Shown in pieces: positions 13,401-62,241 of a stretch of 64,000 nucleotides of DNA. Position numbers and translations under genes: made by a program. Source of the DNA: Scyliorhinus canicula (lineage: Eukaryota); the NCBI RefSeq assembly GCF_902713615.1, contig NC_052170.1, positions 4,340,001-4,404,000 on the forward strand, in the 5' to 3' direction. Under the pieces are notes generated by a model, which searched no databases, was not told the origin of the DNA, and worked only from the letters and a program-made list of their open reading frames with translations. The stretch's first letter is position 1. Each line of letters starts with the position of its first letter.

Positions 13401-13968
13401 GAACAGTGAAGCAGACGGAGAAACACACCGCACAATGAAACTCGTATCTGTGGAGAAATTGATTTCAAAGGCGGTCAGTTAGGGCAACGTTCCTCAAGCA
13501 AGAGGGCAGAGCAGCATCAGCTATCTTCCCCAGAGGGCCCAGGCATATTTCTTGACTGAAGTTACAATAATACTGAAGCAAAGCAAGGAGCCAGGACTGC
13601 AGGTTTGGTGATGCACAAGTTAACCAGCCGGTAATCAGCCAAGACAGGATGCAATATTCAATCCTTCATTCTGAAGCCCTGGTAGTTATGCTTGGGACAG
13701 ATCTTGCTGCCCTATCTTTATCTATCGATCAGGGGAATGTTGCTGGGGCCACTGCTGCTTTAAGAACAGAAGCTCAAGAATGACTGGCAGATCAACAATC
13801 ATTTGTGGGACCTTGCCATGTGCCAATTGGCCACGGTGTTTCCTACATTATTGTACAGCACTTTTGGGACATCCTGTGGTCATGGGAGACACTTTATAAA
13901 ATGAAAGTTTTTCTTTTTACACACTATGGATTGGACAGAAGCTCACCTGGCGTCCTCCAGTCAGCCAT
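1460..13968 (-). CDS. SSX2IP/ADIP-like (afadin- and alpha-actinin-binding) coiled-coil protein, 13 coding exons, ~596 aa; divergent, probably a paralog
   Basis: Coding exons (minus, all GT-AG, phases consistent): 13968-13947 (MADWRTP), 13447-13281 (..VFCWGDNAEECISYLNK), 11690-11475 (ELNALGLPPLF..), 10727-10617, 9419-9284 (VVKLQSIIASRAAQYLHELKRKEQELNKLKEK), 8549-8474 (LDILNPIGRSDGKRSFWRTSKSE), 7121-6947 (EEEMYKVL..NAELTRVLNQMKSEM), 5698-5584, 4473-4337, 3671-3510 (QKKNFEAERQNFTEAAIRLGQE), 3368-3251 (RKLFEEERALHLKEQFLNLTPF), 2424-2247, 1637(or 1631)-1460 (TAA). Motifs align colinearly with remembered human SSX2IP (MGDW.., KLQNIIASRATQY, FTEAAIRLGLERKAFEEER). The last two exons are less certain. 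Confidence 0.9.
5960..6070. repeat. ~29-bp tandem repeat x4
   Basis: GGGGCTGT(A/G)TGCAAGGGAGTTGACGCAAC units. Confidence 0.85.
9510..10175 (-). mobile_element. CR1-group LINE 3' fragment
   Basis: Frameshifted ORF2 C-terminus (LGVTIDQKLNWTSYMNTVATRAGQRL, KAQVRSVME, AAMCTIYKMH, GLQRFKKTTRHHLL). Related pieces at 20360-20560, 39160-39600 and 45420-45780. Confidence 0.75.
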
Positions 13969-15546
13969 CTCTCCAATTGGGAATCCAACTTTCAACACAA
14001 AGAAAATATAAATTATTACACAATTATTATGGTGAGGGCTGGAGGAAGATAAGCAAAGGAGACAAGATGGTGTTTGAGGAAGTTTAATAAAAAAATAACA
14101 TCTTCACAAATTCTACCATCTCTCTCATACCACTCTCAAACTCTGGTATGGCAGGATAGTGTGGAGCTGCCCCCACCCACCATTCACAAAGGGAAATTGG
14201 AACACCACATTAAAAGATATGGACAGGAGCAGACGCAACAGTAGTGATTGCCTAGGTGTCAGGAGGTATATATAGTCTCAAACTTCCCACCACAGCCCTG
14301 GGGAGCAAAACAATAATCACACCAACATTAGCACCTAAACCTTTAGCTTCCTGCAGCTTTCTACCTCATTACTGCTACATGTGCTGGGTCACTCTGCTAC
14401 CTCCCATGAAAAATATTGAGCCAGCATTGATCAGTGTTCTGCATTAAAACCTGGTAACAGAAGTACAAATGCATTTGAAGCACCTCAGATACATATCAGT
14501 GTTTTTTGTTTTGTTTTTTAAAATAGGAGGCTTTGTGCCTTTATCACCTTTTCAGACATTGCATTCCAGACCTGGGTGATTAGAAAACATTCCTCAACTC
14601 CCCTAGAATTTTTCCACCAATTATTTAAAAAGAGATATTATCTTCTCCCAAAAGAAAAATCCTTCCTATCCCCTCAATGTCAGTCATGTCAGATAAATAA
14701 CAGAAAATGCAGGAGAAACTAAAATGCAGGAGAAACTAAGCAAGTCTGGCAGCATCCCTGGAGAGAAAAACAGAGTTAACATTTCAAATTCATATGACTC
14801 TTCAAATAAATCTACACTCAGCTTTTGTTCCAAACCAAAGAACATTGCATATTTTAGAAGAGGCCATTTGGCCCACCAAACCTGCACTCATCCACATTCC
14901 TTATTTAGACCGACTACTCATTGTACAAGAAATCTGTATCACTCCATTCCCCAACCATTTATGTGTCTATTAAGATACATCTTCAACATTATCATGCCTG
15001 CCTTCACCACCTCCATTAAAAACATGTTCCAGGCACCCACCACCTTCTGCATGAAAAATATTCCCTCTCAACTTGTACCTGTGACCCCTTGCAATTAACC
15101 AGCCTATACAATCCTTCCTAACCCTGGGAATGCTTCAGCTCTGGCAATATCCTTAGGTTAGGAGTAGCCTGTGAATCATTAACCTGACCACATCCGTCTT
15201 GTGTGTCAGCCAAAACTGGGCACAGTGGCTAGCACTGCTGCCTCACAGCACCAAGGGCCCAGGTTCAATCCCAGCCCCAGGTCACTCACTGTCTGTGTGG
15301 AGTTTGCAAATTCTCTGTGTGAGTCTCACCCCCACACAACCCAAAAGTTGTGCAGGTTAGGTGGATGGGCCATGATCAATGCACAAGGTTAGGGCAGGGG
15401 AGTGGGCAGGGCGCTCATTGGGAGGGTCAGCATAGACTCGATGGGCCAAACAGCCTCCCTTCTACAGGGTGCGGTCATGCTGACTCAGGGAGAGGGCCTG
15501 CTGGGAAGGAGGGACCTCTAACCGGCTCTGGGACCTCTCTCCGGAG

Positions 15547-15790
15547 ACTCACCACCCAGTGTCCCCAAGCCCACACAGACACCCATTCCCCATTTAAATC
15601 CCCCTCCATAACAACCACCCCGCCCCACCGGCGACACCCATTGGACCGCGCCCTTTACCACCCCGCCAATCCGCAGCCGCCCTGAGGAACCAGCTGACCA
15701 ATCGGAGCAGTACGCACGCGCACGCCTCAAAGTGCATCCTGGGAGTTGTAGTTCTCCCGTCTTCTGCTTTGACACGCCGCTCAATGCTGC
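15547..15790 (-). promoter_or_regulatory. CpG-rich promoter and non-coding first exon of the SSX2IP-like gene
   Basis: Donor GTGAGT at 15552-15547. CCAAT boxes (~15640, 15667, 15698), GC box ccgcccc (~15620), NRF1-like cgcacgcgcacgc (~15713-15725) and a ZNF143/THAP11-type ACTACAACTCCCAGGATGC on minus at 15752-15734. Confidence 0.75.
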
Positions 15791-17049
15791 CCCTTGTGGC
15801 AGGAGGTCCAATTAGCACAGAGACAGCAGAGTTACACCTGTCAGCACCTTTTAATGCATCCCAAAACAGCTCAGCAGCCAGTGCAGCATTGAGTAAGAAG
15901 TGGAGTACCCTCCCCCCCACACTCAATTCATTTTTTTCTTCCCTTCTGTTAATCTGACTTTAATTCACCCTCATTCCCCTTTGTTCAGAACTCACTCATC
16001 CCTGTCAGCTTCTTAATGAATCTTAAACACCTTCATTACATCCACCCACTAATCTTCTATACACAATCCAAGGTTAATCTAGGCAATTTATGGGTGGTTA
16101 GTGCTTAGTACTACTGCCTCACAGCACCAGGGTCCCAGCCTTGGGTCACTGTCTGTGCGGAGTCTGCACATTCTCCCTGTGTCTGCGTGGGTTTCCTCCG
16201 GGCGCTCCGGTTTCCTCCCACAAGTCCCGAAAGACGTGCTGTTAGGTGAATTGGACATTCTAAATTCTCCCTCTGTGTACCCGAACAGACTCCGGAATGG
16301 GCTGTTATAGGGGCTGTTTAGCACAGGGCTAAATCGCTGGCTTTGAAAGCAGACCAAGGCAGGCCAGCAGCACGGTTCGATTCCCGTAACAGCCTCCCCG
16401 AACAGGCGCCGGAATGTGGCGACTAGGGGCTTTTCACAGTAACTTCATTTGAAGCCTACTCGTGACAATAAGCGATTTTCATTTCATTTTCATGTGGCAA
16501 CTAAGGGGATTTTCACAGTAACTTCATTGCAGTGTTAATGTAAGCCTACTTGTGACAATAATAAAGATTATTATTGAATGGCCCCCTTCTGCACTACAAG
16601 GGAGTCTATGAAACATGGCCTCAATGTAAACCTTTTACCTCTGGCATAATTCCAGTAACTGTGCTACACCCCTCCAGAGAATCCTCACAGTGCAAAAGGA
16701 GGCCATTCAGCCCATCAAGTATGCACCTACCCACCGAAAGAACACCCCACCTCGGTTTCTCCCCCCTGCCCGCCCCTGCAATCCCTACCTAACCCTCACA
16801 TCTTTGGGCATAAAGCAGCAATTTAGCATGGCCAATTCCCCTAACCTGCACACCTTTGGACTCCTCCTGGGCCAATATGTCCTTCGCGAGGTTCAGTACT
16901 CAGAATTGAACACTGGGGCTGCAGTACTTCGGGCTGACCCTTATGTATAATCCCAGGATCTGAATCTCAGCAGGTTTTACAGCTAGGCTGCTGGAACCAG
17001 GTCAATGCCCATCTTCAGGGCTTGTGTGTTCACATCCAGCTGGCTGGAG

Positions 17050-17245
17050 AGGAACTTGCGGATAAGAACTCTGACATCTCCGCATACTTCTGATTCTGGC
17101 ATCTTGCACATCCGAGATTTAAATCGTTCCACCATTGACGGCCGTGCCTTAAGCTGTCTGGGCTTCCAGCTCTGGAATTCCCTCTCTAAAAAACTCTCCT
17201 CCACCAGTCTACCTCCTTTGAGACATTCTTTAAAACCTACTTCTC
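17050..17245 (+). mobile_element. L2-type LINE 3' fragment
   Basis: SDSGILHI..STIDGRALSCLGFQLWNSL resembles an L2 ORF2 C-terminus. Similar decayed piece at ~58680-58990. Confidence 0.55.
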
Positions 17246-18249
17246 CGAGAAATCGAAAAGCAGAACACTGTGGACGCTGGAAATCTGAAACAAAAACGGA
17301 AAATTCTGAAAACACCCAGAAAAAAAAAATTGATCATTCTGACAAATCTCATAATTTACTTGTCGATATGCGAGTAACAAAGTTTGCGAAGTAAATTGCT
17401 GCGGATGCTGGAATCTGAAACAGAAAATACTGGGCGATCTCAGCAGGTCTGACAGCCTCTGTGGAGAGCGGAGGGAGCTAACTTTTCGAGTCAGGGTGAC
17501 TCGTTTAGTCATAAAGATTTTAACTATGAAGCTGCTCTAGGAGGAAATTTGAAGATGTTGGGAGAATGTTTTTCTGTGGTTTCAGGAAAGCTCTGTAAGT
17601 TGGTGTGGGACTGTGTTGTGGTGAGAGGGGAAAACGAGATTTTACACGAGAAATGAGGGTGGCACAGTGGTTAGCACTGCTGCCTCACAGCATCAGGGAC
17701 CCCGAGTTCGAATCCGGCCTCGGTTAACTGTGTGGAGTTTACACGTTCTCCCCGTGTCTGCGTGGGTTTCCTCCCGCAGTTCAAAGATATGCAGCTTAGG
17801 TGGATTGGCACATGATCAATGTGCGGGTGAGAGGGATGGGGTGGTGGAGTTGACCCAGGTAGAGTGCTCTTTCGGAGGGTTGGTGCATAGGCCAAATGGC
17901 CTCCTTTTGCATTGTAGAGATTCTGCAGAAGCTCGGCAGAATCTGCGTAGAGAAGCAGAGTGAAGGTTTTCCAGCATTTCGGGAGCAATCATTTGGTCAT
18001 CTGTTCCAACACGATATCGCCTTATGGGTGCTGATGAGTGCTTCTGTGAAGCACTGTGGACTGTTTAACTATGTAAAAGGTACTTTATAAATAATGGCGG
18101 TTATTCATTCCACATTCCCTAGTTTAAGTGCACAAAGACAATTGGAGTTTTCCTACAGTATTGACCGCATTCTGAGTAGACATGAGCCCTGGCCTGTGAT
18201 GCTTTGTGCAACCCTCGTGTTCAGTAGACAGCGTTACCAAAGGGAATCC

Positions 18250-18530
18250 TACATTTATATAACGCCTTTCATGATGTCCCCAAGCACATTACAGCCAATG
18301 AGGTACTTGTTCAAAGTGTGGGTCACTGTTGTAATACCGGATACATGACAGCCACTGTGTGCACAGCACGTTCCCACCAAACAGCAATGTGGTAGTGACC
18401 TGAAAATCTGTTTGTTTGACGGATCAATATTGGCCAGGACGCTGGGGAGAACGCTTCTCGAATAGTAACTGTGGGAACTTCCACAGCCATCTGAGGGGCC
18501 TGACAGAGCGGAGCCTCTGTTTAATACTTT
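18250..18530 (-). mobile_element. Deu-domain (AmnSINE/SacSINE-like) SINE remnant
   Basis: Contains CAGCCAATGAGGTACTT..CAAACAGCAATG..AATATTGGCCAGGAC, characteristic of the Deu core read antisense. Other remnants at about 6420-6740, 13790-13910, 21590-21810, 23750-24965, 40180-40260 and 46480-46605. Confidence 0.6.
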
Positions 18531-18596
18531 AACCTAAAGTAAAGCAGCACCACAAGGTTTGACAAGTTGTCAGTTATAAATGTTTAATACAAATAC

Positions 18597-18602
18597 TTTA
18601 TT
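18597..18602 (-). terminator. CLPP polyadenylation signal
   Basis: tttatt on + (AATAAA on minus) ~75 nt after the stop codon. Confidence 0.65.
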
Positions 18603-18677
18603 GGCTTGATGCTGAAACTGCAATCCGACAAAATGTGGAAGGATTGGGCTGAAGGTCACTCAGGTGGACCGAACAGT

Positions 18678-28599
<9,922 letters not shown>

Positions 28600-28900: not shown

Positions 28901-31900
28901 CCAGACACTGAGAGACCCCAGACACTGAGATACTCCAGACACTGAGATACTCCAGACACTGAGATACCCCAGACACTGAGATACTCCAGACACTGAGATA
29001 TTCCAGACACTGAGATACTCCAGACACTGAGATACTCCAGACACTGAGATACCCCAGACACTGAGAGACCCCAGACACTGAGATACTCCAGACACTGAGA
29101 TACCCCAGACACTGAGATACCCCAGACACTGAGATACTCCAGACACTGAGATACTCCAGACACTGAGATACCCCAGACACTGAGATACCCCAGACACTGA
29201 GATACTCCAGACACCCAGACACTGAGATACTCCAGCCACAGAGATACTCCAGACACTGAGATACTCCAGACACTGAGATACTCCAGACACTGAGATACCC
29301 CAGACACTGAGATACCCCAGACACTCAGATACCCCAGACACTGAGATACTCCAGACACCCAGCCACTGAGATACTCCAGCCACAGAGATACTCCAGACAC
29401 TGAGACACTCCAGACACTGAGATACTCCAGACACTGAGATACTTCTGACACTGAGATACTCCAGACACAGAGATACTCCAGACACTGAGACACTCCAGAC
29501 ACTGAGATACTCCAGACACTGAGATACTCCAGACACTGAGATACCCCAGACACTGAGATACTCCAGACACTGAGATATTCCAGACACTGAGATACTCCAG
29601 ACACTGAGATACTCCAGACACTGAGATACTCCAGACACTGAGATACTCCAGACACTGAGATACTCCAGACACTGAGACACTCCAGACACTGAGATACCCC
29701 AGACACTGAGATACTCCAGACACTGAGACACTCCAGACACTGAAATACTCTAGACACTGAGATACTCCAGACACTGAGATACTCCAGACACTGAGATACT
29801 CCAGACACTGAGATACTCCAGACACTGAGATATTCCAGACCCTGAGATACTCCAGACACTGAGATACTCCAGACACTGAGATACTCCAGACACTGAGATA
29901 CTCCAGACACTGAGACACTCCAGACACTGAGATACCCCAGACACTGAGATACTCCAGACACTGAGACACTCCAGACACTGAAATACTCTAGACACTGAGA
30001 TACTCCAGACACTGAGATACTCCAGACACTGAGATACTCCAGACACTGAGACACCCAGACACTGAGATACCCAGACACTGAGATACTCCAGACACTGAGA
30101 CACTCCAGACACTGAGATACCCCAGACACTGAGATACTCCAGACACTCCAGACACTGAGATACTCCAGACACTAAGATACCCCAGACACTGAGATACTCC
30201 AGACACTGAGATACTCCAGACACTGAGACACTCCAGACACTGAAATACTCCAGACACTGAGATACTCCAGACACTGAGATACTCCAGACACTGAGACACT
30301 CCAGACACTGAGACACCCAGACACTGCGATACTCCAGACACTGAGACACTCCAGACACTGAGATACTCCAGACACTGAGATACTCCAGACACCCAGACAC
30401 TGAGATACTCCAGACACTGAGACACTCCAGACACTGAGATACTCCAGACACTGAGATACTCCAGACACTGAGACACTCCAGACACTGAGACACTCCAGAC
30501 ACTGAGATATCCCAGACACCCCAGACACTGAGATACTCCAGACACTGAGATACTCCAGACACTGAGATAATCCAGAAACTGAGATACTCCAGACACTGAG
30601 ATACTCCAGACACTGAGATACCCCCGACACTGAGATACTCCAGACACTGAGATACTCCAGACACTGAGATACTCCAGACACTGAGATACTACAGACACTG
30701 AGATACTCCAGACACTGAGATACCCCAGAGACTGAGATACCCCAGACACTGAGATACTCCAGACACTGAGATACTCCAGACACTGAGATACTCCAGACAC
30801 TGAGATACCCCAGACATTGAGATACCCCAGACACTGAGATACTCCAGACTCTCAGACACTGAGATACCCCAGACACTAAGACACCCCAGACACTGAGACA
30901 CCCCAGACACTGTAATACTCCAGACACTGAGATACCCCAGACACTGAGATACCCCAGACACTGAGATACTCCAGACACTGAGATACTCCAGACACTGAGA
31001 TACTCCAGACACTGAGATACTCCAGACACTGAGATACCCCAGACATTGAGATACCCCAGACACTGAGATACTCCAGACTCTCAGACACTGAGATATCCCA
31101 GACACTGTAATACTCCAGACACTGAGATACCCCAGACACTGAGATACCCCAGACACTGTAATACTCCAGACACTGAGATACCCCAGACACTGAGATACCC
31201 CAGACACTGAGATACTCCAGACACTGAGATACTCCAGACACTGAGATACTCCAGACTCTCAGACACTGAGATACTCCAGACACTGAAATACTCCAGACAC
31301 TGAGATATCCCAGGTCTGAGATACCCCAGACACTGAGACACCCCAGACACTGTAATACTCCAGACACTGAGATACCCCAGACACTGAGATACTCCAGACA
31401 CTGAGAGACCCCAGACACTGAGATACTCCAGACACTGAGATACTCCAGACACTGAGATACTCCAGACACTGAGATAATCCAGAAACTGAGATACTCCAGA
31501 CACTGAGATACTCCAGACACTGAGATACTCCAGACACTGAGATACTCCAGACACTCAGATATCCCAGACACTGAGATACCCCAGACACTGAGATACTCCA
31601 GACACTGAGACACCCAGACACTCCAGACACTGAGATAACCCCAGACACTGAGATACTCCAGACACTGAGACAACCCAGACACTGAGATAATCCAGACACT
31701 GAGATACTCCAGACACTGAAATACTCTAGACACTGAGATACTCCAGACACTGAGATACCCCAGACACTGAGATACTCCAGACACTGAGATACTCCAGACT
31801 CCCAGACACTGAGATACCCCAGACACTGAGATAATCCAGACACTGAGATAATCCAGACACTGAGATACTCCAGACACTGAGATACTCCAAACACTGAGAC

Positions 31901-33630
31901 ACCCCAGACACTGAGACACTCCAGACACTGAGACACTCCAGACACTGAGATACTCCAGACACCCAGACACTGAGATACTCCAGACACTGAGACACTGCAG
32001 ACACTGAGACACTCCAGACACTGAGATACTCCAGACACCCAGACACGGAGATACTCCAGACACCCAGACACTGAGATACCCCAGACACTGAGATACTCCA
32101 GACACTGAGATACCCAGACACTGAGATACTCCAGACACTGAGATATCCCAGACACTGAGATACTCCAGACACTGAGATACCCCAGACACTGAGATACTCC
32201 AGACACTGAGACACCCAGACACTCCAGACACTGAGATACTCCAGACACTGAGACACCCAGACACTCCAGACACTGAGACACCCCAGACACTGAGATAACC
32301 CCAGACACTGAGATACTCCAGACACTGAGACACCCTGACACTGAGACACCCCAGACACTGAGACACCCCTGACACTGAGACACCCCAGGCACTGAGACAC
32401 TCCAGACACTGAGATACTCCAGACACTGAGATACCCCAGACACTGAGACACCCAGACACTGAGATACTCCAGACACTGAGACACTCCAGACACTGAGATA
32501 CTCCAGACACTGAGATAATCCAGAAACTGAGATACTCCAGACTCTCAGACACTGAGATACTCCAGACACTGAGATACCCCAGGCACTGAGACACTCCAGA
32601 CACTGAGATACTCCAGACACTGAGATAATCCAGAAACTGAGATACTCCAGACTCTCAGACACTGAGATACTCCAGACACTGAGATACCCCAGGCACTGAG
32701 ACACTCCAGACACTGAGACACTCCAGACACTGAGATACCCCAGACACTGAGACACTCCAGACACTGAGATACCCCAGACACTGAGATACCCCAGACACTG
32801 AGATACCCCAGACACTGAGATACTCCAGACACTGAGATACTCCAGACACTGAGATACCCCAGACACTGAGATACTCCAGACACTGAGATACTCCAGACAC
32901 TGAGATACTCCAGACACTGAGACACTCCAGACACTGAGATACTCCAGACACTGAGATAATCCAGAAACTGAGATACTCCAGACTCTCAGACACTGAGATA
33001 CTCCAGACACTGAGATACCCCAGGCACTGAGACACTCCAGACACTGAGACACTCCAGACACTGAGATACTCCAGACACTGAGATAATCCAGAAACTGAGA
33101 TACCCCAGACACTGAGATACCCCAGACACTGAGATACCCCAGACACTGAGATACTCCAGACACTGAGATACCCCAGACACTGAGATAATCCAGACACTGA
33201 GATACTCCAGACACTGAGATACCCCAGAAACTGAGATACCCCAGACACTGAGATACTCCAGACACTGAGGTATCCCAAACACCCCAGACACTGAGATACT
33301 CCAGACACTGAGATACTCCAGACACTGAGATAATCCAGAAACTGAGATACTCCAGACACTGAGATACTCCAGACACTGAGATACCCCAGACACTGAGATA
33401 CCCCAGACACTGAGGTATCCCAGACACCCCAGACACTGAGATACTCCAGACACTGAGATACTCCAGACACTGAGATAATCCAGAAACTGAGATACTCCAG
33501 ACACTGAGATACTCCAGACACTGAGATACCCCAGACACTGAGATACTCCAGACACTGAGATACTCCAGACACCCAGACACTGAGATACTCCAGACACCCA
33601 GACACTGAGATACTACAGACACTGAGATAC
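28900..33630. repeat. 17-bp tandem satellite (GACACTGAGATACTCCA)n, left arm, ~4.7 kb
   Basis: Hundreds of near-identical 17-nt units with variants (CCCC/CTCC, GATAATCCAGAAACT, shortened units). It is the source of the SGVSQCLEYLSVWSISV pseudo-ORFs. Confidence 0.98.
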
Positions 33631-36600
33631 AGTGCCTTGATCACGGAGGCCGAGGTCGTATTGGGGCAGGGGACAGAAAAAGGGAAGCGGGAGAATTTGT
33701 CGATAACGGTGAGGAAATAGATGTTGCGGTTGGTGGACGGGAGGGGCCCTTTGAAGCTCACGCTTAGTCGCTCAAAGGGCCCAGAGGCCTTCATCAGGCG
33801 GGCCTTGTCTGCTCGATAGAATTGCGGTTTGCATTCCGCACAGATCTGGCATGCCTTAGTCATGGCCTTGACCTCCCCTGTGGAGTAGGGTAGCTTGCAG
33901 GACTTGATGAAGTGGGCAAGCCGGTGGCAGAGGTCATCGTGGATGGATCTCAGGCGGTCCAATTGCGCGTTGGCGCACGTGCCGCGAGACAGGGCATCTG
34001 GGGACTCGTTGAGCTTACCCGGGCGATATTTAATATCGTACGTATAGGTGGAGAGCTCTATCCTCCACCTCAGAATTTTGTCGTTCTTTATTTTGCCCCG
34101 TTGTGCGTTATCGAACATAAAGGCGACCGGCCGTTGGTCGGTGATGAGGGTGAACCTCCTACCAGCTAGGTAGTGCCTCCAGTGTCGCACGGCCTCCACA
34201 ATGGCTTTTGCCTCCTTCTCGACTGCAGAGTGTCGAATTTCCGAGGCGTTGAGGGTTCGGGAGAAGAACGCTACTGGTCTGCCCACTTGGTTGAGGGTAG
34301 CAGCCAGGGCGACGTCTGATGCGTCGCTTTCTACTTGGAAGGGAATGGCTTCGTCCACCGCGTGCATGACGGCCTTGATGATGCCGGCCTTGATACGGTC
34401 GAAAGCCGACTGGGCCTCATCCGTCAGGGGAAAAACCGTGGTCTTAATGAGTGGCCGGGCTTTGTCCGCATATCTGGGGACCCACTGGGCGTAATAGGAG
34501 AAAAGCCCCAAGCACCGTTTGAATGCCTTGAGGCTACGGGGAAGGGGGAGTTCCTTAAGGGGACACATGCGGTCGGGGTCCGGGCCTAGGACCCCGTTTT
34601 CCGCGACGTAGCCGAGGATGGCGAGCCGGGTTGTGTGGAACACGCATTTCTCTTTCTTGTACGTGAGGTTGAGGGCCCGGGCAGTCTGGAGGAACTTCCT
34701 CAGGTTTGCGTCATGGTCCTGATGGTCATGGCCGCAGATGGTGACGTTGTCCAAGTACGGGAAGGTAGCCCATAAGCCGTACTGGTCCACCATTTGATCC
34801 ATCGCCCTCGGGAAAGCGGAGACTCTGTAACACCAAAGGGGACCCTGAGGAAGTGAAACAGCCGACTGGCTGCTTCAAAAGCCGTGTAGGGGCGGTCCTC
34901 TGAGCGGATATGGAGTTGATGGTAGGCCGATTTTAGGTCAACCGTGGAGAATACCCGATATGGGCGATGGAGTGACCACTTCAGCTATGCGGGGAAGTGG
35001 GTAAGCATCGAGTTGTGTAAAGCAGTTTATGGTCTGGCTATAATCCACTACCATTCGTTGCTTTTCCCCGGAGCGGACTACCAATACTTGAGCCATCCAA
35101 GGGCTGTTGCTGGCCTCTATGACCCCCTCTTTTAGTAGCCGCTGAACCTCTGACTTGATAAAAGTCATGTCTTGGGTACTGTACCGGCAACTCTTGGTGG
35201 CGATGGGCTTACAGTCGGGCGTGAGGTTCGCGAAGAGGCGGGGTGGCGCAACTTTGAGTGTCGCCAGGCTGCAGACAGTGAGTGGGGGCAGGGGTCCGCC
35301 GAACTTCAGTGTCAGGCTCCGGTGGCTGCACTGAAAGTCCAGACCGAGCAGCAGGGGGGGGGGCGCAGAGTTGAGGGAGGATGTAAAGTTTAAAATTGTA
35401 TTTAGCGCCTTGAATTGTGAGGTCAGCGACACAATACCCCGTGATTTGTACCGAATGGGACCCTGAGGCAAGGGCGATAGTTTGGGAGGCGGGATGGGTG
35501 CGCAGGGAGCAGTGCCTTACCGTGTCTGGGTGGATAAAGCTCTCCGTGCTCCCGGAGTCGAACAGGCAGGGAGTGTCATGGCCGTTGATTCGCACCCGCA
35601 TCATTGAGGTTCGCAGGTGCTTCGGCCGCGATTGATCGAGTGTGATCGCTCCTAGTTGCGGGCTGTTAGAGTCGAACTCACAAAATGGCCGCCCGGAGTC
35701 ACAAGATGGCCGCCGCCGCCGGTCGAACTTGTCGGGTTTCGAAGATGGCCGCCGCCAAGATGGCCGCTCCCATGACTCGCACGAGGTCGATGACGCGTCG
35801 GAAGTGGGCGTGCCCGGCCGCAGCGCGGCCACGTTGCGGGGTCTGTGAGACCAGGAGCTTGATTTCTGGGCCTGATGAGGATTTTGTTTGTGGCTTTTGG
35901 GCCCAGCCAGGCAGACTTTCGTAAAGTGCCCTTTCTTCCCGCAGTTGTTGCAGATCGCGGATCGGGCCGGGCAATGCTGACGTGGCTGCTGGCCTTGCCC
36001 ACAGAAATAATATGGGGAACCCCCGGAGTGAGTAGATCGTCACGTGGCACAGGCCTGTAGCGTGGCCAAGTCTGGAGGGGATAGAGAGGGGTTCGCAAGG
36101 TCCGCGGAGTACGTACGGAGGTTACGGTGGCCCTTTCGAGAGAAGAGGCGAGCGTTACCGTGCCCTGGAGATCCTTTGCCCCGTCTTCTAGGAGTCGCTG
36201 CCGGATGTACAAGGACCTGATACCAGACACAAGGTCGTCGCAAATATGTAAGTTCGTGTGGTCTTCTGCCGTCACTGCTTTGTGATCGTAGTTCCTCGCG
36301 AGCGCGGTGAGTCTTTCCACAAACTCGTCCAGCGTTTCCCCGGAACGCTGGCTGCAGGTTGAGAGCAAATGTCTGGCATGTACCTCGTTAGTAGGTTTTA
36401 TGAAGCGTTTCTTCAATATTTCCACGGCCGCCTCATAGCTCGTAGCAGTTTCGATCACGGCAGAGAGTCGGTGGCCCACCCAGCTTGCGAGTGCTGTCGA
36501 CATCAGTCGTTGAGGAGTCCAGATAGTCCTCAAAACACCGGAGCCAATGTTTAAACATTTCCGGGGCTTCCGGCGACCGAGCGTCCAGGTTGAGTTTCTC

Positions 36601-37010
36601 CGGGTTTAGAGCGCTGTCCATCTTGATGTGTCTGTAGATTAAATTGAGGCACTCTCAATTACGATGCCAGAGCGAGGTCGGTAATCAAAGGCTTTAATCA
36701 AGGGGCTGTTTAGCTCACAGGGCTAATCACTGGCTTTGAAAGCAGACCAAGGCAAGTCAGCAGCACGGTTCGATTCCCGTAACAGCCTCCCCGAACAGGC
36801 GCTGGAATGTGGCGACTAGGGGCTTTTCACAGTAACTTCATTTGAAGCCTACGCGTGACAATAAGCGATTTTCATTTCATTAATATACAGAGAACAGGAC
36901 AGCATTTGAGAGAAGTGTGCTCGCCACATGGAGCCTTATCCTATATACTGTTTCCTGGGGGCGTAGCCAGAGGCGGAGTCCCCCAGGGTTCCAAGCCTCT
37001 TAATAATCCA
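33630..37010 (-). mobile_element. Ty3/Gypsy LTR retrotransposon, decayed and 3'-truncated (5' LTR, gag, PR, RT, RNase H, partial IN)
   Basis: Short LTR ~37010-36645 (TATA ~36945, ATTAAA, ends CA). gag ATG at 36621 with a Cys/His knuckle (CNNCGKKGHFTKVC, ~35950). Protease LFDSGST, RT (RMVVDYS..DAYPLP, FPYLDNVT), RNase H (VESDASD, HSAVEKE, TDQ), integrase (HDDLCH..CQICAEC, FKGPLP, VIDKFSRFP) cut off at ~33630. Several frameshifts; no 3' LTR. Confidence 0.95.
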
Positions 37011-37384
37011 GACACTGAGATACTCCAGACACTGAGATACTCCAGACACTGAGATACTCCAGACACTGAGATACTCCAGACACCCAGACACTGAGATACT
37101 CCAGACACCCAGACACTGAGATACCCAAGAAACTGAGATACTCCAGACACTGAGATACTCCAGACACCCCGACACTGAGATACTCCAGACACTGAGATAC
37201 TCCAGAACTGAGATACTCCAGACACTGAGATACCCCAGACACTGAGATACTCCAGACACTGAGATACCCAAGAAACTGAGATACTCCAGACACTGAGATA
37301 CTCCAGACACCCCGACACTGAGATACTCCAGACACTGAGATACTCCAGAACTGAGATACCCCAGACACTGAGATACCCCAGACA
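37005..37384. repeat. 17-bp tandem satellite, right arm
   Basis: Same unit and orientation resume on the far side of the Gypsy element. Confidence 0.97.
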
Positions 37385-40468: not shown

Positions 40469-45171
<4,703 letters not shown>

Positions 45172-51875: not shown

Positions 51876-52490
51876 AATACAAAAACCCTCGGAACAGAAT
51901 TAATTTGTTCGGTAATTCAAGGAAGTAATTGTAACTCGATATCTATGCTTCTGCTGGTCCAACATGCCAATGGGCAGGAACTCTAATTCGGATTGTGTTC
52001 AGTCTATAAACTGAACAGAGACATTTGCTCACCGGTATGTGTAAAATTGTTTTTGGCGAGCAGAACTTAACTGGTGCCCATCTCCTGGTTGAATGGGTCT
52101 TGATCACTGATGGGGGGGGGGGGGGGGGGGGGGGGGTTCACTGAACAGTGAATGCCCTCACGTTGTGCTCGGATTTTATAGCTCATACAGGAGTTACTGC
52201 TTTTGAAGTTGTTTTCAGCTTTGCTTCCGCACACCAACCATGTCCAACTTTGTGACCGGGGAGGTGAACAAGTCCAGCACCATAACCCATTCTCACAACT
52301 CCATCGATGCGGTGAAATGTGCCAAGCGTGACCTGGGGATGATTTAGCCCCAAGGGCCCCCTCCACCCAGCCCCTCCCGTGGGAAAGCCCTTTCCGACCC
52401 CCCCCCCCCCCCCCCCCCCCCCCACCATGTAGGTGACAATAGAAACACAGCATAGGGGAACAGCACTGTGTAACACTCTACATCATTCCT

Positions 52491-52696
52491 TTTTTAAAAA
52501 TTACTTTTTCTGTGTACAAAGCCAGGGCTCAGAGTGTGGGTCAGGGGTGAACCCCTAATCCAGTTCCCTGCCTGCTCCAAAAACCAATTCAAATTCAAAA
52601 TGAATCCAATTCATGGTCCCCACCAGCGACAGACCAGGTCTGAGCCAAAAGGCAGAGCAGATACACTTGATCTCGGCCAAAAGGCTGAGAAGCTAT
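52491..52696 (-). mobile_element. U2-snRNA-derived short retroposon, copy 2, full length with 17-bp TSD
   Basis: Minus strand begins ATAGCTTCTCAGCCTTTTGGCCGAGATCAAGTGT at the U2 +1 position and ends in an A-rich tail. Flanked by CACTCTACATCATTCCT at 52474-52490 and 52697-52713. Confidence 0.85.
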
Positions 52697-54868
52697 CACT
52701 CTACATCATTCCTGTGCCCAGACCACCGTCTGTTAAATCCGTTTTACCTGCACCGTAAGCAGGACTGGACTATCAGCTTGTTTCTTGTACCACAAACTGT
52801 AAAAATGTACTTTAATAATTAAAGATTAACCAGGGAGTCAATTATTGTGTTGCTTGTTCATGTTACTCTAACCCAGTTGCATTTTTCCTAGATATATTTC
52901 TAAACAACTGTTTTGTTTCGTACACAGAGAGTGGGAATGTTGCCTCATTCCTGGACTCCTTTCTCTCTGCAGATTCTGTCAGACCTGTTGTGATTGTCCA
53001 CTATGTTCTGTTTCAGATCCCTGCCCCCGCAGTAATTTGATTTTACCTGGACTTTCTCTGCTGCTTTTTAAACTCAGTCTGAACAGATACACAGACGTGC
53101 CGATTGTACTGCCCTGACATCCCATCTAAAAGGCCACATTCCGGCGCCTGTTCGGGGAGGCTGGTACGGGAATCGAACCGTGCTGCTGGCCTGCTTTAAA
53201 ACCCAGCGATTTAGCCAAGTGAGCTAAACAAGTGAGCTAGACCAGAACTAGCCGCTGCTGATGCCCTAAATCTCCAGCTGGTCGGACCATTTAATGGTGG
53301 GTCCATTTGTTGCAATCAGAATGGTGGTGTTGCGTCTCAAATTTGTTTGCGTGCTCACCATGCTGGTTTGTGAGGCATTGCTATCAAATCCAAGCTCACC
53401 TGTTTTCCAGTGAGGTATTAAAGTAAGTCAGTCCCCCAGGGAAGAATTAGGCAGACTGCTCCTGCCTCTCAGCACTCCTCCATGTACTCTCCCTTCAGAG
53501 GCGAGATGGTGCGGCACATATTTCAGGATTTAGACGTGGAGAAGATATTTCCACTTGCAGGAGAGACCAGACCATGCCATGTAAGATCATCACTAATAAT
53601 CCAATAAGGATTCAGGAGAAACTTTGTTGGACGGATAATGGTGAGAATATGGAACTCTGCCACAGACGGTAGTTGAGGTGAATAAGGGGAAGCCGGTAAG
53701 CACACAAGGTAGAAAGGAAGAGGATATATTGATAGGTTGAGGTGAAGATGGGTGGGAGGAGGCTCGTCTGAACGTAAACAGCACGAAGCAGCCATCACGT
53801 AGATTTGTTGCGACACCAACAATTAGCACATGATGTTTTCAATTAGGGCAGTGTGGATGTTCACTGTTAAAAGCTCCAAAACAACACCAAGCCACACAAA
53901 GCGTCTCTCCATATTTTATTGAAATTCACAGGAAGGAACACATTCATACCCAATAACAGCATTAACACGGAATACAGTTTCACCGCTCAGTACCTGCGAT
54001 TCTGTCCAAGCTGAGAATTACCGCAGGATTCATTTCACTGAGGGGGAATGTTCACCTCGCTGTGCAGAGTCTGCATGGCCTGCAGTGACAGATACTGTCC
54101 CTGGTCAGATTTAACGAAGGAATGTAACCAGCTCTTTACACCTTCAAACTAGACCCTAAATAGTGTTAAATATGACATAAACTACAGTTTAAAAAAAGAT
54201 CAACACTCTTCAGTCAAGTGGCCTGGAGTCTCTCAAAGACATTCACATAACACAAACTAACAAAGTCCTAAATTAGATGCTGAGGTAATGCAGATACCAA
54301 AACTTTGGTATGGGGGCGGGGGCTGGCAGTAGTTGAGATATTTGTCACCCTCAAAAAAAAGGAAAAAATTCAATATCTTGCACACACTTGGAAGATTCTT
54401 TTTTTTAAAATTTAGAGTACCCAATTCATTTTTCCAATTAAGGGGCAATTTAACATGTTCAATCCACCTACCCTGCACATCTTTGGGTTGTGGGGGCGAA
54501 ACCCATGCAGACAAGGGGAGAATGTGCAAACTCCACACGGACAGTGACCCAGAGGCAGGATTGAACCTGGGACCTCGGTGCCGTGAGGCAGCAGGGCTAA
54601 CCCACCGCGCCACCGTGCCGCCTTGGAAGATTCTTTTTTAAACTTTCACAAAGTTCTATTTTTTTTTTAAACCGCAAAGGACCTGGCCTTATTGCTCGGC
54701 CCGAGAAGGAATGATTGAGAAAATAAAACTGAACAAAGAGGTAGCTGCTTTAAAAAATATAAACTTTTAAACCATCAATGCTAATTGCGGCTGACTTTGA
54801 AACTCGGATCTTCATTCTTCCCTTTTTAAAAAGATTGTTGGTGAAATGGACGACAGCAATAGTCACTG

Positions 54869-60800: not shown

Positions 60801-62241
60801 AAGATCAAGAAAACTTACATCTCATCAGTGTGTGCTGGATCTAGATCCTGAAGCTGAAAGGTCAGTGTGCCAACCTACCCATGAAGTCCCTGAATGGAGC
60901 AAATGCCATTATTTGCCAGAGTAGTGAAATGTGTAACTCAGATCAACCTAGTCTACACCATTTCACAGCAGAAGCATTCAGGCTCTGAAGGTTGTTTTTC
61001 CCTTACCTTATTTGTCCTTCTTCATCTGAAGGGTATGCCAAGAGCAGCAGTCCTATGTTCATGATGACATGATTGGTTATCGGGCATACCTTGAAACAGA
61101 AAGAGATCATTATTGACAGTCCCGAAAGCAGAAATGAACTGCACTAAAAGCACAAACTTATAACCAACTTTTCTCACAGGCTTTTGAACAGAAGGTGCCC
61201 AAGGAACAATTGGATACAGAGAATGTGTTAAAAGAGGGTCATGGGTGGCGAGTAGCCAGTCAGTTAGGCCTCGAGATCTCCTGTCCACTCCTAAAAAAAA
61301 AGCTTGCATTCTTTTCTCGAGCACCTGAAGTACCTGGAAATAAATCAGCAGAAACCAGCCACTCACCTCCCATATTGTGGGAGAAAACTGGATGTCATTC
61401 TTGACCACACTCAGACTACTGTTTATGGACAGTTTCAGAGTGGACCAGCAGTGACCCTGCTTGCTGGCCCCTCAGCTGGTCACACGCGCTGAGAGTGGTG
61501 CAGGGAAGCAGCTGGTCACACGCTGGTCATAGGCTAAAACATGAGTGACAAAGTGTTTCAAACCCTAGACATGAGAGTGGTGCAGGGAAGCAGCTGGTCA
61601 CACGCGCTGAGAGTGGTGCAGGGAGGGAAGCAGCTGGTCACACGCGCTCAGAGTGGTGCAGGGAAGAAACCACTGTTTCAAACAAAACAATGAAACTGGA
61701 ACTTGGACAGAAACTTCATTCTAATCATTTCAAACATCTGCTGTAACGGAATGGGGCCTCTAACCAGTGACGCTGCGATCCTCAAAATCCCTCCATCTCA
61801 AATTTACCCAACTTCAGTTTCAGAGAACTGATTTCTCGTCTGGAGACTAATTTATTTTACTGACAATAACTGTGTCCAGCCTCTCATTTCCTCCTCACTG
61901 GGGGTGAATCAAAGCGGCACAGACTGTATCCAGCCTCTCATTTCCTCCTCACTGGGGGTGAATCAAAGCGGCACAGACCGAAGGCCCGCATGATGGGGTC
62001 AATCTACAGTGCTATGACATGAAGAATCACTGTGAAACCGTGTCCTGTCTGTCACTCATCCCACACCAGGGGCTGTCCAAAACACTTTGCCTTCCTGTCT
62101 AAATCCACTCACCTCTAGGATTACAATATCATAGTCACTGAAGGAACAGTATCGCTTCGACCAGGATGCGTCGTTCCGTATGACCTCATTGATGACATAT
62201 TCAAAGTCGAGTGTCAGCTGCTCCACAGTGAGGTACTTGCC
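54869..62241 (-). CDS. DCAF15: DDB1- and CUL4-associated factor 15, last five coding exons (5' part lies beyond the window)
   Basis: Exons 62241-62113 ([43 protein letters not shown]), 61089-61007 ([27 protein letters not shown]), 57273-57169 ([35 protein letters not shown]), 57069-56954 ([34 protein letters not shown]), 54924-54869 ([18 protein letters not shown]). Phases match and the sequence matches the human DCAF15 C-terminus. AATAAA on minus at 53920-53915. Confidence 0.95.
54960..55930 (-). mobile_element. CR1-like LINE fragment in the last DCAF15 intron
   Basis: Recognisable decayed CR1 ORF2/3'UTR on the minus strand. Confidence 0.65.
57738..57982 (-). mobile_element. Probable solo LTR inserted in an HE1-type SINE
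   Basis: Minus strand starts TGTTATAAC, has a TATA-like box and AATAAA, and cleanly interrupts a SINE tail. The terminal CA is not evident. Confidence 0.55.
59150..60040 (+). mobile_element. CR1-like LINE 3' fragment interrupted by an HE1-type SINE (59453-59772)
   Basis: [25 protein letters not shown] and [22 protein letters not shown]. The LINE sequence resumes after the SINE. Confidence 0.8.
61869..61978. repeat. 54-bp tandem duplication
   Basis: ACTGTRTCCAGCCTCTCATTTCCTCCTCACTGGGGGTGAATCAAAGCGGCACAG x2. Confidence 0.9.

What the first reader, a model, noticed from the sequence alone, without database searches (positions are those of the whole stretch)
52474..52713. A U2-snRNA-headed retroposon family (SINEU-like) in a shark: two independent copies, one with a perfect 17-bp TSD
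Seen: a 206-bp minus-strand element starts at the U2 +1 position (ATAGCTTCTCAGCCTTTTGGCCGAGATCAAGTGT), ends in an A-rich tail and is flanked by identical 17-mers (52474-52490, 52697-52713). A second copy at 23033-23232(+) shares features absent from canonical U2: CTGGTCTGTC..GTGGGGACCATGAA.TGGA.TCA.TTTGAATTT.AATTGGTTTTTGGAGCA.GCA.GGA.CTGGATTA..GGTT..CCCCT..GGCTTTG. In both, the branch-point pairing GTAGTA is altered and the Sm site reads GTTTTTG instead of ATTTTTG. Established: ordinary U2 retropseudogenes decay independently from canonical U2, and U1/U2-derived SINEs (SINEU) are known from crocodilians. Inference: shared derived states mean a common non-canonical master RNA, and two copies in 64 kb suggest high copy number. 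It is either a U2-derived SINE with no internal Pol III promoter or a heavily retroposed variant snRNA. The long TSD and A tail point to L1/Tx1-type machinery. I cannot confirm that it is undescribed.
Basis: partly seen in the sequence, partly recalled or inferred. Interest (0 to 1): 0.85.

Follow-up and report, generated by a model that had tools for sequence, protein, structure and literature searches.

The report
Shark U2-snRNA-derived SINE family copies
Both stretches are retroposed copies of an abundant short repeat that descends from the U2 spliceosomal RNA, a kind of mobile element published so far only from crocodilians, and this scan has already met the same family elsewhere in this genome.

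Summary
Copy 1 (52491-52696, minus strand) is a 206-bp element. It starts at U2 position +1, ends in an A-rich tail and is flanked by an exact 17-bp target-site duplication. It just passes Rfam's U2 threshold (47.6 bits against 46). Copy 2 starts at 23033 (plus strand) and is longer than reported. A 323-bp LINE 3' fragment with its own 7-bp duplication splits it at 23232/23233, and its tail resumes at 23563-23595.

Contigs of a DNA run of the same organism, laid on either copy, pile up on the ~85-bp core. Summed depth there is about 9,000-21,000 against about 3 on copy 1's unique flanks, which suggests thousands of copies. Their majority letters turn both copies into nearly the same sequence. 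The lost branch-point box, the GTTTTTG Sm-like site and a specific 3' tail are therefore family traits, not private decay.

Copy 2 sits at the same locus in two other species labels (about 99% and about 90% alike), so it is old. Copy 1 belongs to a subfamily with a near-canonical U2 5' end.

The best reading is a U2-derived, promoter-less SINEU-like retroposon moved by L1/Tx1-type machinery. The source promoter and the partner LINE are not shown. I found no paper describing it in sharks. Repbase and Dfam could not be checked. The scan found this family before on other DNA of this genome.

The parts
52697..52713 (-). Upstream copy of the 17-bp target-site duplication of copy 1 (AGGAATGATGTAGAGTG on the element's strand).
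   Evidence: Exact match to 52474-52490. The flanks have single-copy depth in the DNA run.
52654..52696 (-). Copy 1 head, matching U2 positions 1-46 in near-canonical form. The GUA at model positions 36-38, half of the branch-point box, is missing.
   Evidence: In the Rfam U2 alignment 39 of 44 aligned positions match the consensus, and every mismatch in the first 35 lies at a weakly conserved (lower-case) position.
52638..52654 (-). A second stem-loop-I-like module (TGCCTTTTGGCTCAGAC) inside copy 1. This is the old family 5' end, onto which the near-canonical head appears to have been added.
   Evidence: 13 of 17 letters match stem-loop I of copy 1 and of copy 2. One contig of another species shows the same GCCTTTTGGCTCA/GATCTGG junction. 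Depth here is about 100-300, against about 3 in the flanks.
52517..52637 (-). Copy 1 body, descended from U2. It holds a stem-loop-IIb-like hairpin (ATGAATTGGATTCAT), the Sm-like site GGTTTTTGG (52577-52585), a stem-loop-III-like hairpin (GGGGTTCACCCC) and a degenerate 3' part ending in GGCTTTG.
   Evidence: Rfam alignment. The core 52552-52635 carries a summed contig depth of 4,800-21,500 in the DNA run. The hairpins appear in the predicted fold.
52491..52516 (-). Copy 1 family-specific A/T-rich tail (TACACAGAAAAAGTAATTTTTAAAAA).
   Evidence: Other copies end in ACTCAGATAAAGTATTTTTTAAAA (loose ends). That motif matches here with 2 mismatches, against 0 expected by chance. Depth of 60-340 shows the tail is shared.
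52474..52490 (-). Downstream copy of the 17-bp target-site duplication of copy 1.
23033..23232 (+). Copy 2, 5' part. It holds a U2-like head with a 12-nt duplication (AAGATCAGG...), a stem-loop-IIa-like stretch and the core, and runs up to GGCTTTG.
   Evidence: Rfam U2 28.2 bits. It is close to the family majority, needing 7 majority changes over positions 23079-23153. Contigs of two other species labels span the 5' flank and the element (records 17 and 25).
23233..23555 (+). Nested 5'-truncated 3' end of a much more abundant LINE family. It is not part of the U2-like element. It is flanked by the 7-bp duplication GGCTTTG (23226-23232 and 23556-23562).
   Evidence: Depth steps up from about 2,000-4,000 to 60,000-150,000 at about 23228. 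An open frame ends ...[35 protein letters not shown]. The insert ends in TGTGACAATAAACTAATCAATCA.
23563..23595 (+). Copy 2 tail, resuming after the nested insertion (AAAGGAATCAAATATTTTTTTTAAAAA...).
   Evidence: The profile built from both copies matches 23555-23594 with E 2e-4. It resembles the tail of copy 1 and of other copies.

Best explanation
Both stretches are independent retroposed copies of one abundant, non-autonomous retroposon family that descends from nearly the whole U2 snRNA. The family keeps the U2 5' end from +1, stem-loop I, remnants of stem-loops IIa/IIb, an Sm-like site and stem-loop III. The branch-point box is destroyed. Stem-loop IV is degenerate and runs into a family-specific tail (...GGCTTTGTAACTCAGATAAAGTATTTTTTAAAA).

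Shown here: the family state of these features, an abundance in the thousands, at least two or three 5' subfamilies, retroposition of copy 1 (exact 17-bp duplication, A-rich end, unique flanks), and the old age of copy 2.

Inferred:
- The source RNA is made from one or a few master loci that keep an external snRNA-type Pol II promoter. Copies begin exactly at U2 +1, and the element has no known internal promoter.
- A LINE of the L1/Tx1 type, which primes on A-rich 3' ends, copies that RNA into new sites.
- The near-canonical head of copy 1's subfamily was re-acquired from genuine U2. The route could be template switching at the 5' end of reverse transcription, or recombination at the master locus. 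Kojima proposed the same for crocodilian SINEU-1.
For: Descent from U2: the Rfam matches start at model position 1 for both copies.

Family and abundance:
- In the DNA run X18, 518 contigs lie on the stretch around copy 1. Summed depth is 16,080-21,470 over 52552-52614 against 2.6-3.5 on the flanks.
- Summed depth is 9,246-17,655 over 23102-23185 of copy 2.
- Majority letters make the two copies converge.
- Fewer than 10% of reads differ at the G of the Sm-like site, since no row is listed for 52585.

Shared tail: loose ends of other copies, the motif test, and copy 2's tail behind the nested insert.

The 5' region of other copies is also U2-like:
- Loose ends read TTGTCAGCTTGGATCTGGTATGTCTCTCTT and TAAGATGAGCGTGAGGTCAGGTGTAATGCC.
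- The longest contigs run from about element position 24 to about 156 (records 1, 2, 9, 18).

Retroposition: the exact 17-bp duplication. The flanks of the two copies are unrelated.

Age of copy 2: the orthologous contig in organism C has 3 differences over 288 nt. The one in organism D has 28 differences and 16 gap positions over 420 nt, and it includes the start of the nested LINE.

Same machinery acting nearby: a tRNA-derived SINE at 54405-54621 has an exact 18-bp, A-rich-starting duplication and a ...CTAAATTTTAA end.

No dedicated poly(A)+ transcript: in two oligo-dT RNA runs the flanks are read on one strand only, so the libraries are stranded. The core is read about equally on both strands (31 against 33, and 65 against 86).

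Precedent: SINEU-3 of crocodilians consists of the U2 5' 32 bp, a middle 83 bp and about 40 non-U2 bp, with a poly(A) tail and about 1,600 copies (PMC4494074).
Against: - Summed contig depth is only a rough proxy for copy number, as the tool itself warns.
- Depth over the heads is far lower than over the core: 27-1,190 on copy 2 and 2-90 on copy 1. My data therefore show only tens to hundreds of copies with a comparable 5' region.
- The drop may come from short contigs and a more variable head. It may also mean that many copies are 5'-truncated or belong to a longer element.
- No master locus, promoter or discrete transcript was seen, and no partner LINE was identified. The window holds no LINE reverse-transcriptase frame of 130 aa or more.
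- Copy 2 has no detectable target-site duplication.
- The organism's canonical U2 was not recovered, so the comparison rests on the Rfam consensus.
- The RNA fold of copy 1 is not more stable than shuffles (z -1.6).
Confidence: 0.8

Rival explanations
1. The abundant core is mainly the 3' module of an autonomous Tx1-clade (Keno-like, U2-gene-targeting) LINE. The short U2-headed elements are then its internally deleted, non-autonomous derivatives. They would be transcribed from the U2 promoter of an occupied U2 gene, not from a free-standing SINE derived from U2 RNA.
For: - Depth over the core is 10-100 times that over the heads, as expected for 5'-truncated LINE copies.
- Keno (Tx1 clade) inserts into U2 genes of fish and frogs, and the downstream U2 sequence starts at nt 39 (PMC4494074, PMC4640811).
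- The only break in copy 1's otherwise near-canonical head is at model positions 36-38, next to that site.
- Crocodilian Tx1 families share U1/U2-derived 5' ends with SINEU (PMC4758252).
- Unchecked notes of this scan report a U2 module at the 3' end of a Tx1-like LINE and a U2 fragment heading a Tx1 LINE in this genome.
Against: - Every well-supported 5' continuation of the core in the contigs is U2-like, not coding sequence.
- The longest contigs cover the U2-like 5' region.
- Loss of one GUA from GUAGUA is a simple slippage event.
- The depth drop can be explained by short contigs and a variable head.
- This reading is partly compatible with the best explanation. It differs on the origin and on the transcription route.
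Confidence: 0.15
2. The two copies are ordinary, independently decayed retropseudogenes of the species' U2 snRNA, or of a minor variant U2 gene, and there is no amplifying family.
For: U2 retropseudogenes with poly(A) tracts and target-site duplications are known from mammals (PMC4494074, Discussion).
Against: - Thousands-fold excess depth on the non-canonical core.
- The majority letters of other copies equal the shared derived states.
- The copies share a non-U2 tail.
- The family is also abundant in another species label.
Confidence: 0.03
3. They are functional variant U2 snRNA genes.
For: Copy 1 passes the Rfam U2 gathering score by 1.6 bits and keeps stem-loop I, an Sm-like site and a stem-loop-III-like hairpin.
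Against: - The branch-point recognition box GUAGUA, invariant in functional U2 by established knowledge, is lost in both copies and in the family majority.
- Stem-loop IV is degenerate.
- Copy 1 is flanked by a target-site duplication directly at +1, so it brought no promoter with it.
- The upstream flanks of the two copies are unrelated.
Confidence: 0.02

Closest known systems
SINEU-3 of crocodilians (Kojima 2015, PMC4494074)
   Same: It is a short, promoter-less retroposon made almost entirely of U2 snRNA sequence. It has the U2 5' end, a middle U2 part and about 40 bp of non-U2 3' sequence with an A tail. Copy number is in the thousands, and it carries internal oligo-T runs that argue against Pol III. 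The inner, older 5' end of copy 1's subfamily also looks like a U2 with an internal deletion of about 44 nt, much like SINEU-3's deletion of about 50 bp.
   Different: It occurs in a different vertebrate class. The main subfamily keeps the stem-loop-IIa region and has a 12-nt duplication in place of the deletion. Neither copy here sits in a Mariner element, and copy 1's flanks and copy 2's 5' flank are single-copy. Sequence homology beyond the common U2 ancestry could not be tested because no SINEU consensus is available in the tools.
SINEU-1/SINEU-2 of crocodilians (same paper)
   Same: Fresh U1/U2 5' sequence was added repeatedly onto the 5' end of an existing element. Copy 1's near-canonical U2 1-46 sits in front of an older stem-loop-I module in the same way.
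   Different: Those families have non-snRNA bodies (SINEU-1) or a U1+U2 fusion (SINEU-2). The body here is U2-derived throughout.
Mammalian U2/U6 retropseudogenes and snRNA-L1 chimeras (Van Arsdell 1981; Buzdin 2002; Garcia-Perez 2007, as cited in PMC4494074)
   Same: LINE machinery copies an snRNA, and the copies carry target-site duplications and A tracts.
   Different: Those are independent one-off copies of the functional snRNA. Here thousands of copies share derived states, a tail and subfamilies, so they come from dedicated source genes.
Keno and Utopia, U2-gene-targeting LINEs (PMC4640811; PMC4494074)
   Same: They show an intimate association of Tx1-type or other LINEs with U2 sequence. 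They offer a route by which U2 5' ends and U2 promoters can become attached to retrotransposon RNA.
   Different: They are autonomous, protein-coding and site-specific. The elements here are 200-260 bp, non-coding and inserted in unique DNA.

Membership tests
SINEU (snRNA-headed SINEs, Kojima 2015) | The 5' region derives from U1 or U2 snRNA. | tested here: met
   Rfam U2 matches start at model position 1 for both copies (47.6 and 28.2 bits).
SINEU (snRNA-headed SINEs, Kojima 2015) | A short (<500 bp), non-coding retroposon with a 3' A tail and signs of LINE-mediated insertion. | tested here: met
   Copy 1 is 206 bp with an A-rich end and an exact 17-bp duplication. Copy 2 is about 233 bp once the nested insert is removed.
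SINEU (snRNA-headed SINEs, Kojima 2015) | A high-copy family with a shared structure, not a sum of independent retrocopies. | tested here: met
   Core depth is about 5,000-7,000 times flank depth in a DNA run. There are 518 contigs, shared majority states, a shared tail, and subfamily-specific 5' arrangements seen in other copies.
SINEU (snRNA-headed SINEs, Kojima 2015) | No internal Pol III promoter, and internal oligo-T runs. | tested here: inconclusive
   T4 (CCTTTTGG) and T5 (GGTTTTTGG) runs are present. Absence of promoter activity cannot be tested in silico. The promoter scan offered here is bacterial.
SINEU (snRNA-headed SINEs, Kojima 2015) | [quoted passage not shown] | tested here: not met
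   The target preference is not met. Copy 1's flanks and copy 2's 5' flank are single-copy DNA. The partner LINE is not identified. This feature belongs to the crocodilian families, not to the class.
SINEU (snRNA-headed SINEs, Kojima 2015) | Sequence homology to the Repbase SINEU-1/2/3 consensus beyond the U2 part. | not testable with these tools
   No Repbase or Dfam library is available, and no supplementary file is held for PMC4494074.
Functional U2 snRNA gene (Rfam RF00004) | An intact branch-point recognition sequence GUAGUA and a canonical Sm site. | tested here: not met
   Model positions 36-38 are deleted in copy 1. Copy 2 has four substitutions there. The family majority reads GTAATG or GCAATG. 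The Sm-like site starts with G in place of A.
Functional U2 snRNA gene (Rfam RF00004) | A score at or above the curated gathering score. | tested here: inconclusive
   Copy 1 scores 47.6 against 46. Copy 2 scores 28.2 against 46.

The most novel reading that the evidence does not exclude
The family is the non-autonomous partner of a Keno-like Tx1 LINE that lives in U2 genes. Its source copies sit behind genuine U2 promoters, which solves the long-standing puzzle of how promoter-less snRNA-derived SINEs are transcribed. Its RNA keeps the U2 5' end and an Sm-like site because it rides the snRNA export and Sm-assembly route into the cytoplasm. There it meets the LINE's reverse transcriptase. Repeated re-acquisition of a canonical U2 head, as in copy 1's subfamily, would then be selected for, not accidental.
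Probability: 0.2. Interest if true: 0.75.

Novelty: new member of a known kind. Interest (0 to 1): 0.5.

Why it matters
snRNA-derived SINEs are the one SINE class with no known way of being transcribed. They have been published from a single reptile lineage, where most families are old and no transcript was found.

A second family in cartilaginous fish would show that the class is not a crocodilian oddity. This one has thousands of copies, several subfamilies and at least one copy with an undecayed target-site duplication. It would give a system in which source loci, promoters, transcripts and the partner LINE can be looked for directly.

For genome annotation it also matters in practice. These copies can be mis-called as U2 snRNA genes, since copy 1 passes Rfam's threshold.

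Tried and rejected
- More copies in the window: blastn with word size 7 and an nhmmer profile of both copies found only the two.
- More copies elsewhere: exact scans for two conserved core patterns in metagenome contigs, and for one of them in viral contigs, found nothing. Abundance therefore rests on the two read-laying runs.
- Target-site duplication of copy 2: none within 12 nt of the ends, allowing mismatches. I take this as decay of an old insertion.
- Template-switch chimera of U2-like RNA with the adjacent LINE fragment at 23233: rejected. The LINE piece is flanked by a 7-bp duplication of GGCTTTG, and the U2-like tail resumes behind it.
- Pol III transcription ending at the T run before the final A's, as in polyadenylated 'T+' SINEs: considered because both the U2-like tail and the nearby tRNA-SINE end in T4-8 followed by A's. 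For the U2-like element it is unlikely, because T4 and T5 runs lie inside the body.
- RNA structure as evidence: the fold of copy 1 is not significantly more stable than shuffles (z -1.6). With two copies no covariation test is meaningful.
- Partner LINE in the window: no reverse-transcriptase frame of a LINE among ORFs of 130 aa or more. The only one belongs to a Ty3/gypsy element.
- A master-gene promoter upstream of copy 2: by eye nothing resembles the vertebrate proximal sequence element as I remember it. This is a recollection, not a test.
- Literature: searches for SINEU with shark, for U2-derived SINE, for snRNA-derived SINEs and for SINEU as a whole word gave no report outside crocodilians.
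It is repeated in other notes of the scan, and I did not verify it.
Full report
WHAT IS THERE

Copy 1. On the minus strand, 52491-52696 is a 206-bp element.
- It begins ATAGCTTCTCAGCCTTTTGGCCGAGATCAAGTGTA and ends ...GGCTTTGTACACAGAAAAAGTAATTTTTAAAAA.
- The 17-mers at 52474-52490 and 52697-52713 that flank it are identical.
- Outside the window's tandem arrays, only three exact direct-repeat pairs of 17 nt or more lie 100-400 bp apart. One of the other two also flanks a SINE. The repeat is therefore a target-site duplication and not chance.
- Rfam's U2 model matches 52502-52696 from model position 1 to 192 at 47.6 bits (gathering score 46, E 2.3e-6).

Copy 2. On the plus strand it starts at 23033 with ATCGCTTTTTAGCC and scores 28.2 bits against U2 (E 0.099).
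- The two copies are 84% identical over a 100-bp core and 72% over 206 aligned columns.
- No third copy is in the window.

CORRECTION TO COPY 2

- At 23233 a different repeat starts. Summed contig depth jumps from about 2,000-4,000 to 60,000-150,000.
- An open frame there ends ...[35 protein letters not shown]. About 200 bp of untranslated sequence follow, ending TGTGACAATAAACTAATCAATCA at 23555.
- This 323-bp, 5'-truncated LINE 3' end is flanked by GGCTTTG on both sides (23226-23232 and 23556-23562).
- Behind it the U2-like element resumes with AAAGGAATCAAATATTTTTTTTAAAAA (23563-23595). This resembles the tail of copy 1, and the two-copy profile matches it (E 2e-4).
- Copy 2 is therefore a full element split by a later insertion. 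I found no target-site duplication for it.

A FAMILY, NOT TWO PSEUDOGENES

I laid contigs of public runs of the same organism (names are coded) on each copy at 80% likeness or more.

The stretch around copy 1 in DNA run X18:
- The unique flanks have depth 2.6-3.5.
- 52552-52614 has a summed depth of 16,080-21,470.
- 518 distinct contigs were laid.

Copy 2:
- The core 23102-23185 has a summed depth of 9,246-17,655.

The tool warns that summed depth is not a copy number. As a rough proxy, the ratio of about 5,000-7,000 says 'thousands'.

The scan's own notes give a loose cross-check. They hold 30 'U2 snRNA' findings among 1,305 annotated windows of this genome. These notes are unchecked leads.

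Applying to each copy the letters that the majority of contigs carry makes the two sequences converge on one core:
...TCTGGTATG(TC)TCTCTTGTGGGGACCATGAATTGGATTCAATTTGAATTTGAATTGGTTTTTGGAGCA(G/A)GCAAGGAGCTGGATTA(GG/AA)GGTTTGCCCC...

- The first base of the Sm-like site stays G in more than 90% of the depth, since no variant row is listed at 52585.
- The branch-point box reads GTAATG or GCAATG in other copies (loose ends; majority).

Loose ends also give the rest of the family sequence:
- 5' of the core: TTGTCAGCTTGGATCTGG, like U2 stem-loop IIa and as in copy 2. Further upstream: TAAGATGAGCGTGAGGTCAGGTGTAATGCC.
- 3' of the core: TGTCCACACTCTGAGCTCTGGCTTTGTAACT, then ACTCAGATAAAGTATTTTTTAAAA.
- That last motif, taken from other copies, hits copy 1's tail with 2 mismatches. 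No hit is expected by chance.

The family therefore has a defined tail that canonical U2 lacks. Independent pseudogenes would not share one.

SUBFAMILIES AND COPY 1'S HEAD

Copy 2 represents the main type. It has a diverged head, a 12-nt duplication of AAGATCAGG, and the stem-loop-IIa region.

A second type lacks 14 nt (TGTTCTTGTCAGCT). It is seen in 15 contigs.

Copy 1 is a third type:
- Its first 46 U2 positions are near-canonical. 39 of 44 aligned positions equal the Rfam consensus, and no strongly conserved position in the first 35 is changed.
- A second stem-loop-I module follows (TGCCTTTTGGCTCAGAC). It matches stem-loop I at 13 of 17 positions.
- That module joins the core directly, as if about 44 nt between two GATC motifs had been lost.
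- The junction GCCTTTTGGCTCA/GATCTGG is seen in a contig of another species label. Depth of about 100-300 over 52636-52656 shows that copy 1's arrangement is shared by other copies.

The simplest reading is that an older, internally deleted element received a fresh U2 5' end. Kojima described this process for crocodilian SINEU-1 and ascribed it to template switching. This step is inferred.

One coincidence deserves follow-up. The only gap in that fresh head is at model positions 36-38. The U2-targeting LINEs Keno and Utopia leave downstream U2 sequence starting at nt 39 (PMC4640811). Loss of one GUA from GUAGUA by slippage is the trivial alternative.

AGE

Copy 2:
- A 290-nt contig of organism C covers 22923-23210, that is flank plus element, with 3 differences.
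- A 446-nt contig of organism D covers 22850-23269 with 28 differences and 16 gap positions. It reaches into the nested LINE.
- Both the U2-like insertion and the LINE insertion therefore predate the split of these species labels.
- The family core is also abundant in organism D's run.

Copy 1 has an undecayed duplication and differs from the family majority at about 10 of 110 core positions. Its presence in other species could not be tested.

HOW IT LIKELY WORKS

Shown: copy 1 arose by target-primed reverse transcription into unique DNA (17-bp duplication, A-rich 3' end, single-copy flanks).

A tRNA-derived SINE 1.7 kb away (54405-54621, minus strand) has an exact 18-bp duplication that starts with an A run, and an end ...CTAAATTTTAA. 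This shows the same style of insertion. It hints at a common L1/Tx1-type driver and perhaps a common 3' signal (T run, then A's).

Inferred: the element carries no promoter.
- U2 genes depend on upstream Pol II elements (established knowledge; PMC4494074, Discussion).
- T4 and T5 runs inside the body would stop Pol III.
- Copies start at U2 +1, which points to initiation set by an external snRNA-type promoter at one or a few source loci.

In two stranded oligo-dT RNA runs the flanks are read on one strand only. The core is read about equally on both strands (31 against 33, and 65 against 86 reads). Poly(A)+ RNA thus shows only passenger transcription. A non-polyadenylated source RNA would not be seen there.

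RIVALS

The main rival is that the core is chiefly the 3' module of a Keno-like Tx1 LINE, and the short elements are its deletion derivatives.
- It is suggested by the 10-100-fold lower depth over the heads and by unchecked notes of this scan.
- Against it, all well-supported 5' continuations in my data are U2-like, and the longest contigs cover the U2-like 5' region.
- I give it 0.15. It overlaps with the main reading.

Independent pseudogenes (0.03) and functional variant U2 genes (0.02) are contradicted by the family data and by the lost branch-point box.

COMPARISON AND NOVELTY

The closest known thing is SINEU, and within it SINEU-3 (U2 5' 32 bp + middle 83 bp + about 40 non-U2 bp + A tail, about 1,600 copies).
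- The class features that could be tested are met: a U2-derived 5' end, a short non-coding element with an A tail, and a high-copy family with shared structure.
- The crocodilian target preference for a Mariner element is not seen here.
- Sequence homology to the Repbase consensus could not be tested.
- Kojima stated that no SINEU was detected outside crocodilians.
- No paper in the held library links SINEU or a U2-derived SINE with cartilaginous fish.

Automatic repeat libraries may already hold the family under another name.

This scan has already met the family on other pieces of this genome. One earlier follow-up (s1-210594) reached the same verdict.

I rate it a new member of a known kind, with moderate interest.

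Noticed in passing
window 54387-54639: A tRNA-derived SINE (54405-54621, minus strand) is flanked by an exact 18-bp target-site duplication (CTTGGAAGATTCTTTTTT). The duplication starts with an A run on the element's strand. The element ends ...GGGTACTCTAAATTTTAA. This is an L1/Tx1-style insertion, unlike the LINE-tail-dependent SINE at 22678-22850. Its end resembles the tail of the U2-like family.
   Followed up: partly
window 23233-23555: A 5'-truncated 3' end of an extremely abundant LINE family, with summed contig depth of 60,000-150,000 in the DNA run. Its frame ends ...[35 protein letters not shown], and its 3' terminus is TGTGACAATAAACTAATCAATCA. The insertion is shared with another species label.
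   Followed up: partly
window 22678-22850: A tRNA-derived SINE (ARAGORN calls a tRNA-Tyr-like head at 22678-22765). Its 3' end, CTTGTGACAATAAGCGATTATTATT, shares TGTGACAATAA with the LINE fragment at 23233-23555. This looks like a classic SINE/LINE pair with a shared tail.
   Followed up: no
window 28901-33630 and 37003-37384: A 17-bp satellite (CCAGACACTGAGATACT, about 287 copies) produces long spurious ORFs and weak mir-986 hits. It overlaps the 3' part of a Ty3/gypsy pol frame (RT-RNaseH-integrase, 32655-34802, minus strand). The matching gag frame is at 35652-36533 (minus strand).
   Followed up: no
window 52400-52434: A run of about 35 G on the element's strand lies about 60 bp downstream of copy 1. 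Contigs and reads break there.
   Followed up: no
window 42975-43558: A tandem array of 16-bp units (ATACAGGGGCTGGTTT / AGCTCACTGGGCTGGTTT) appears to be built from the 5' end of the tRNA-derived SINE head (GGGGCTGGTTTAGC...).
   Followed up: no
window 61473-61623: An exact 33-nt direct repeat with 118-bp spacing. It was not examined.
   Followed up: no
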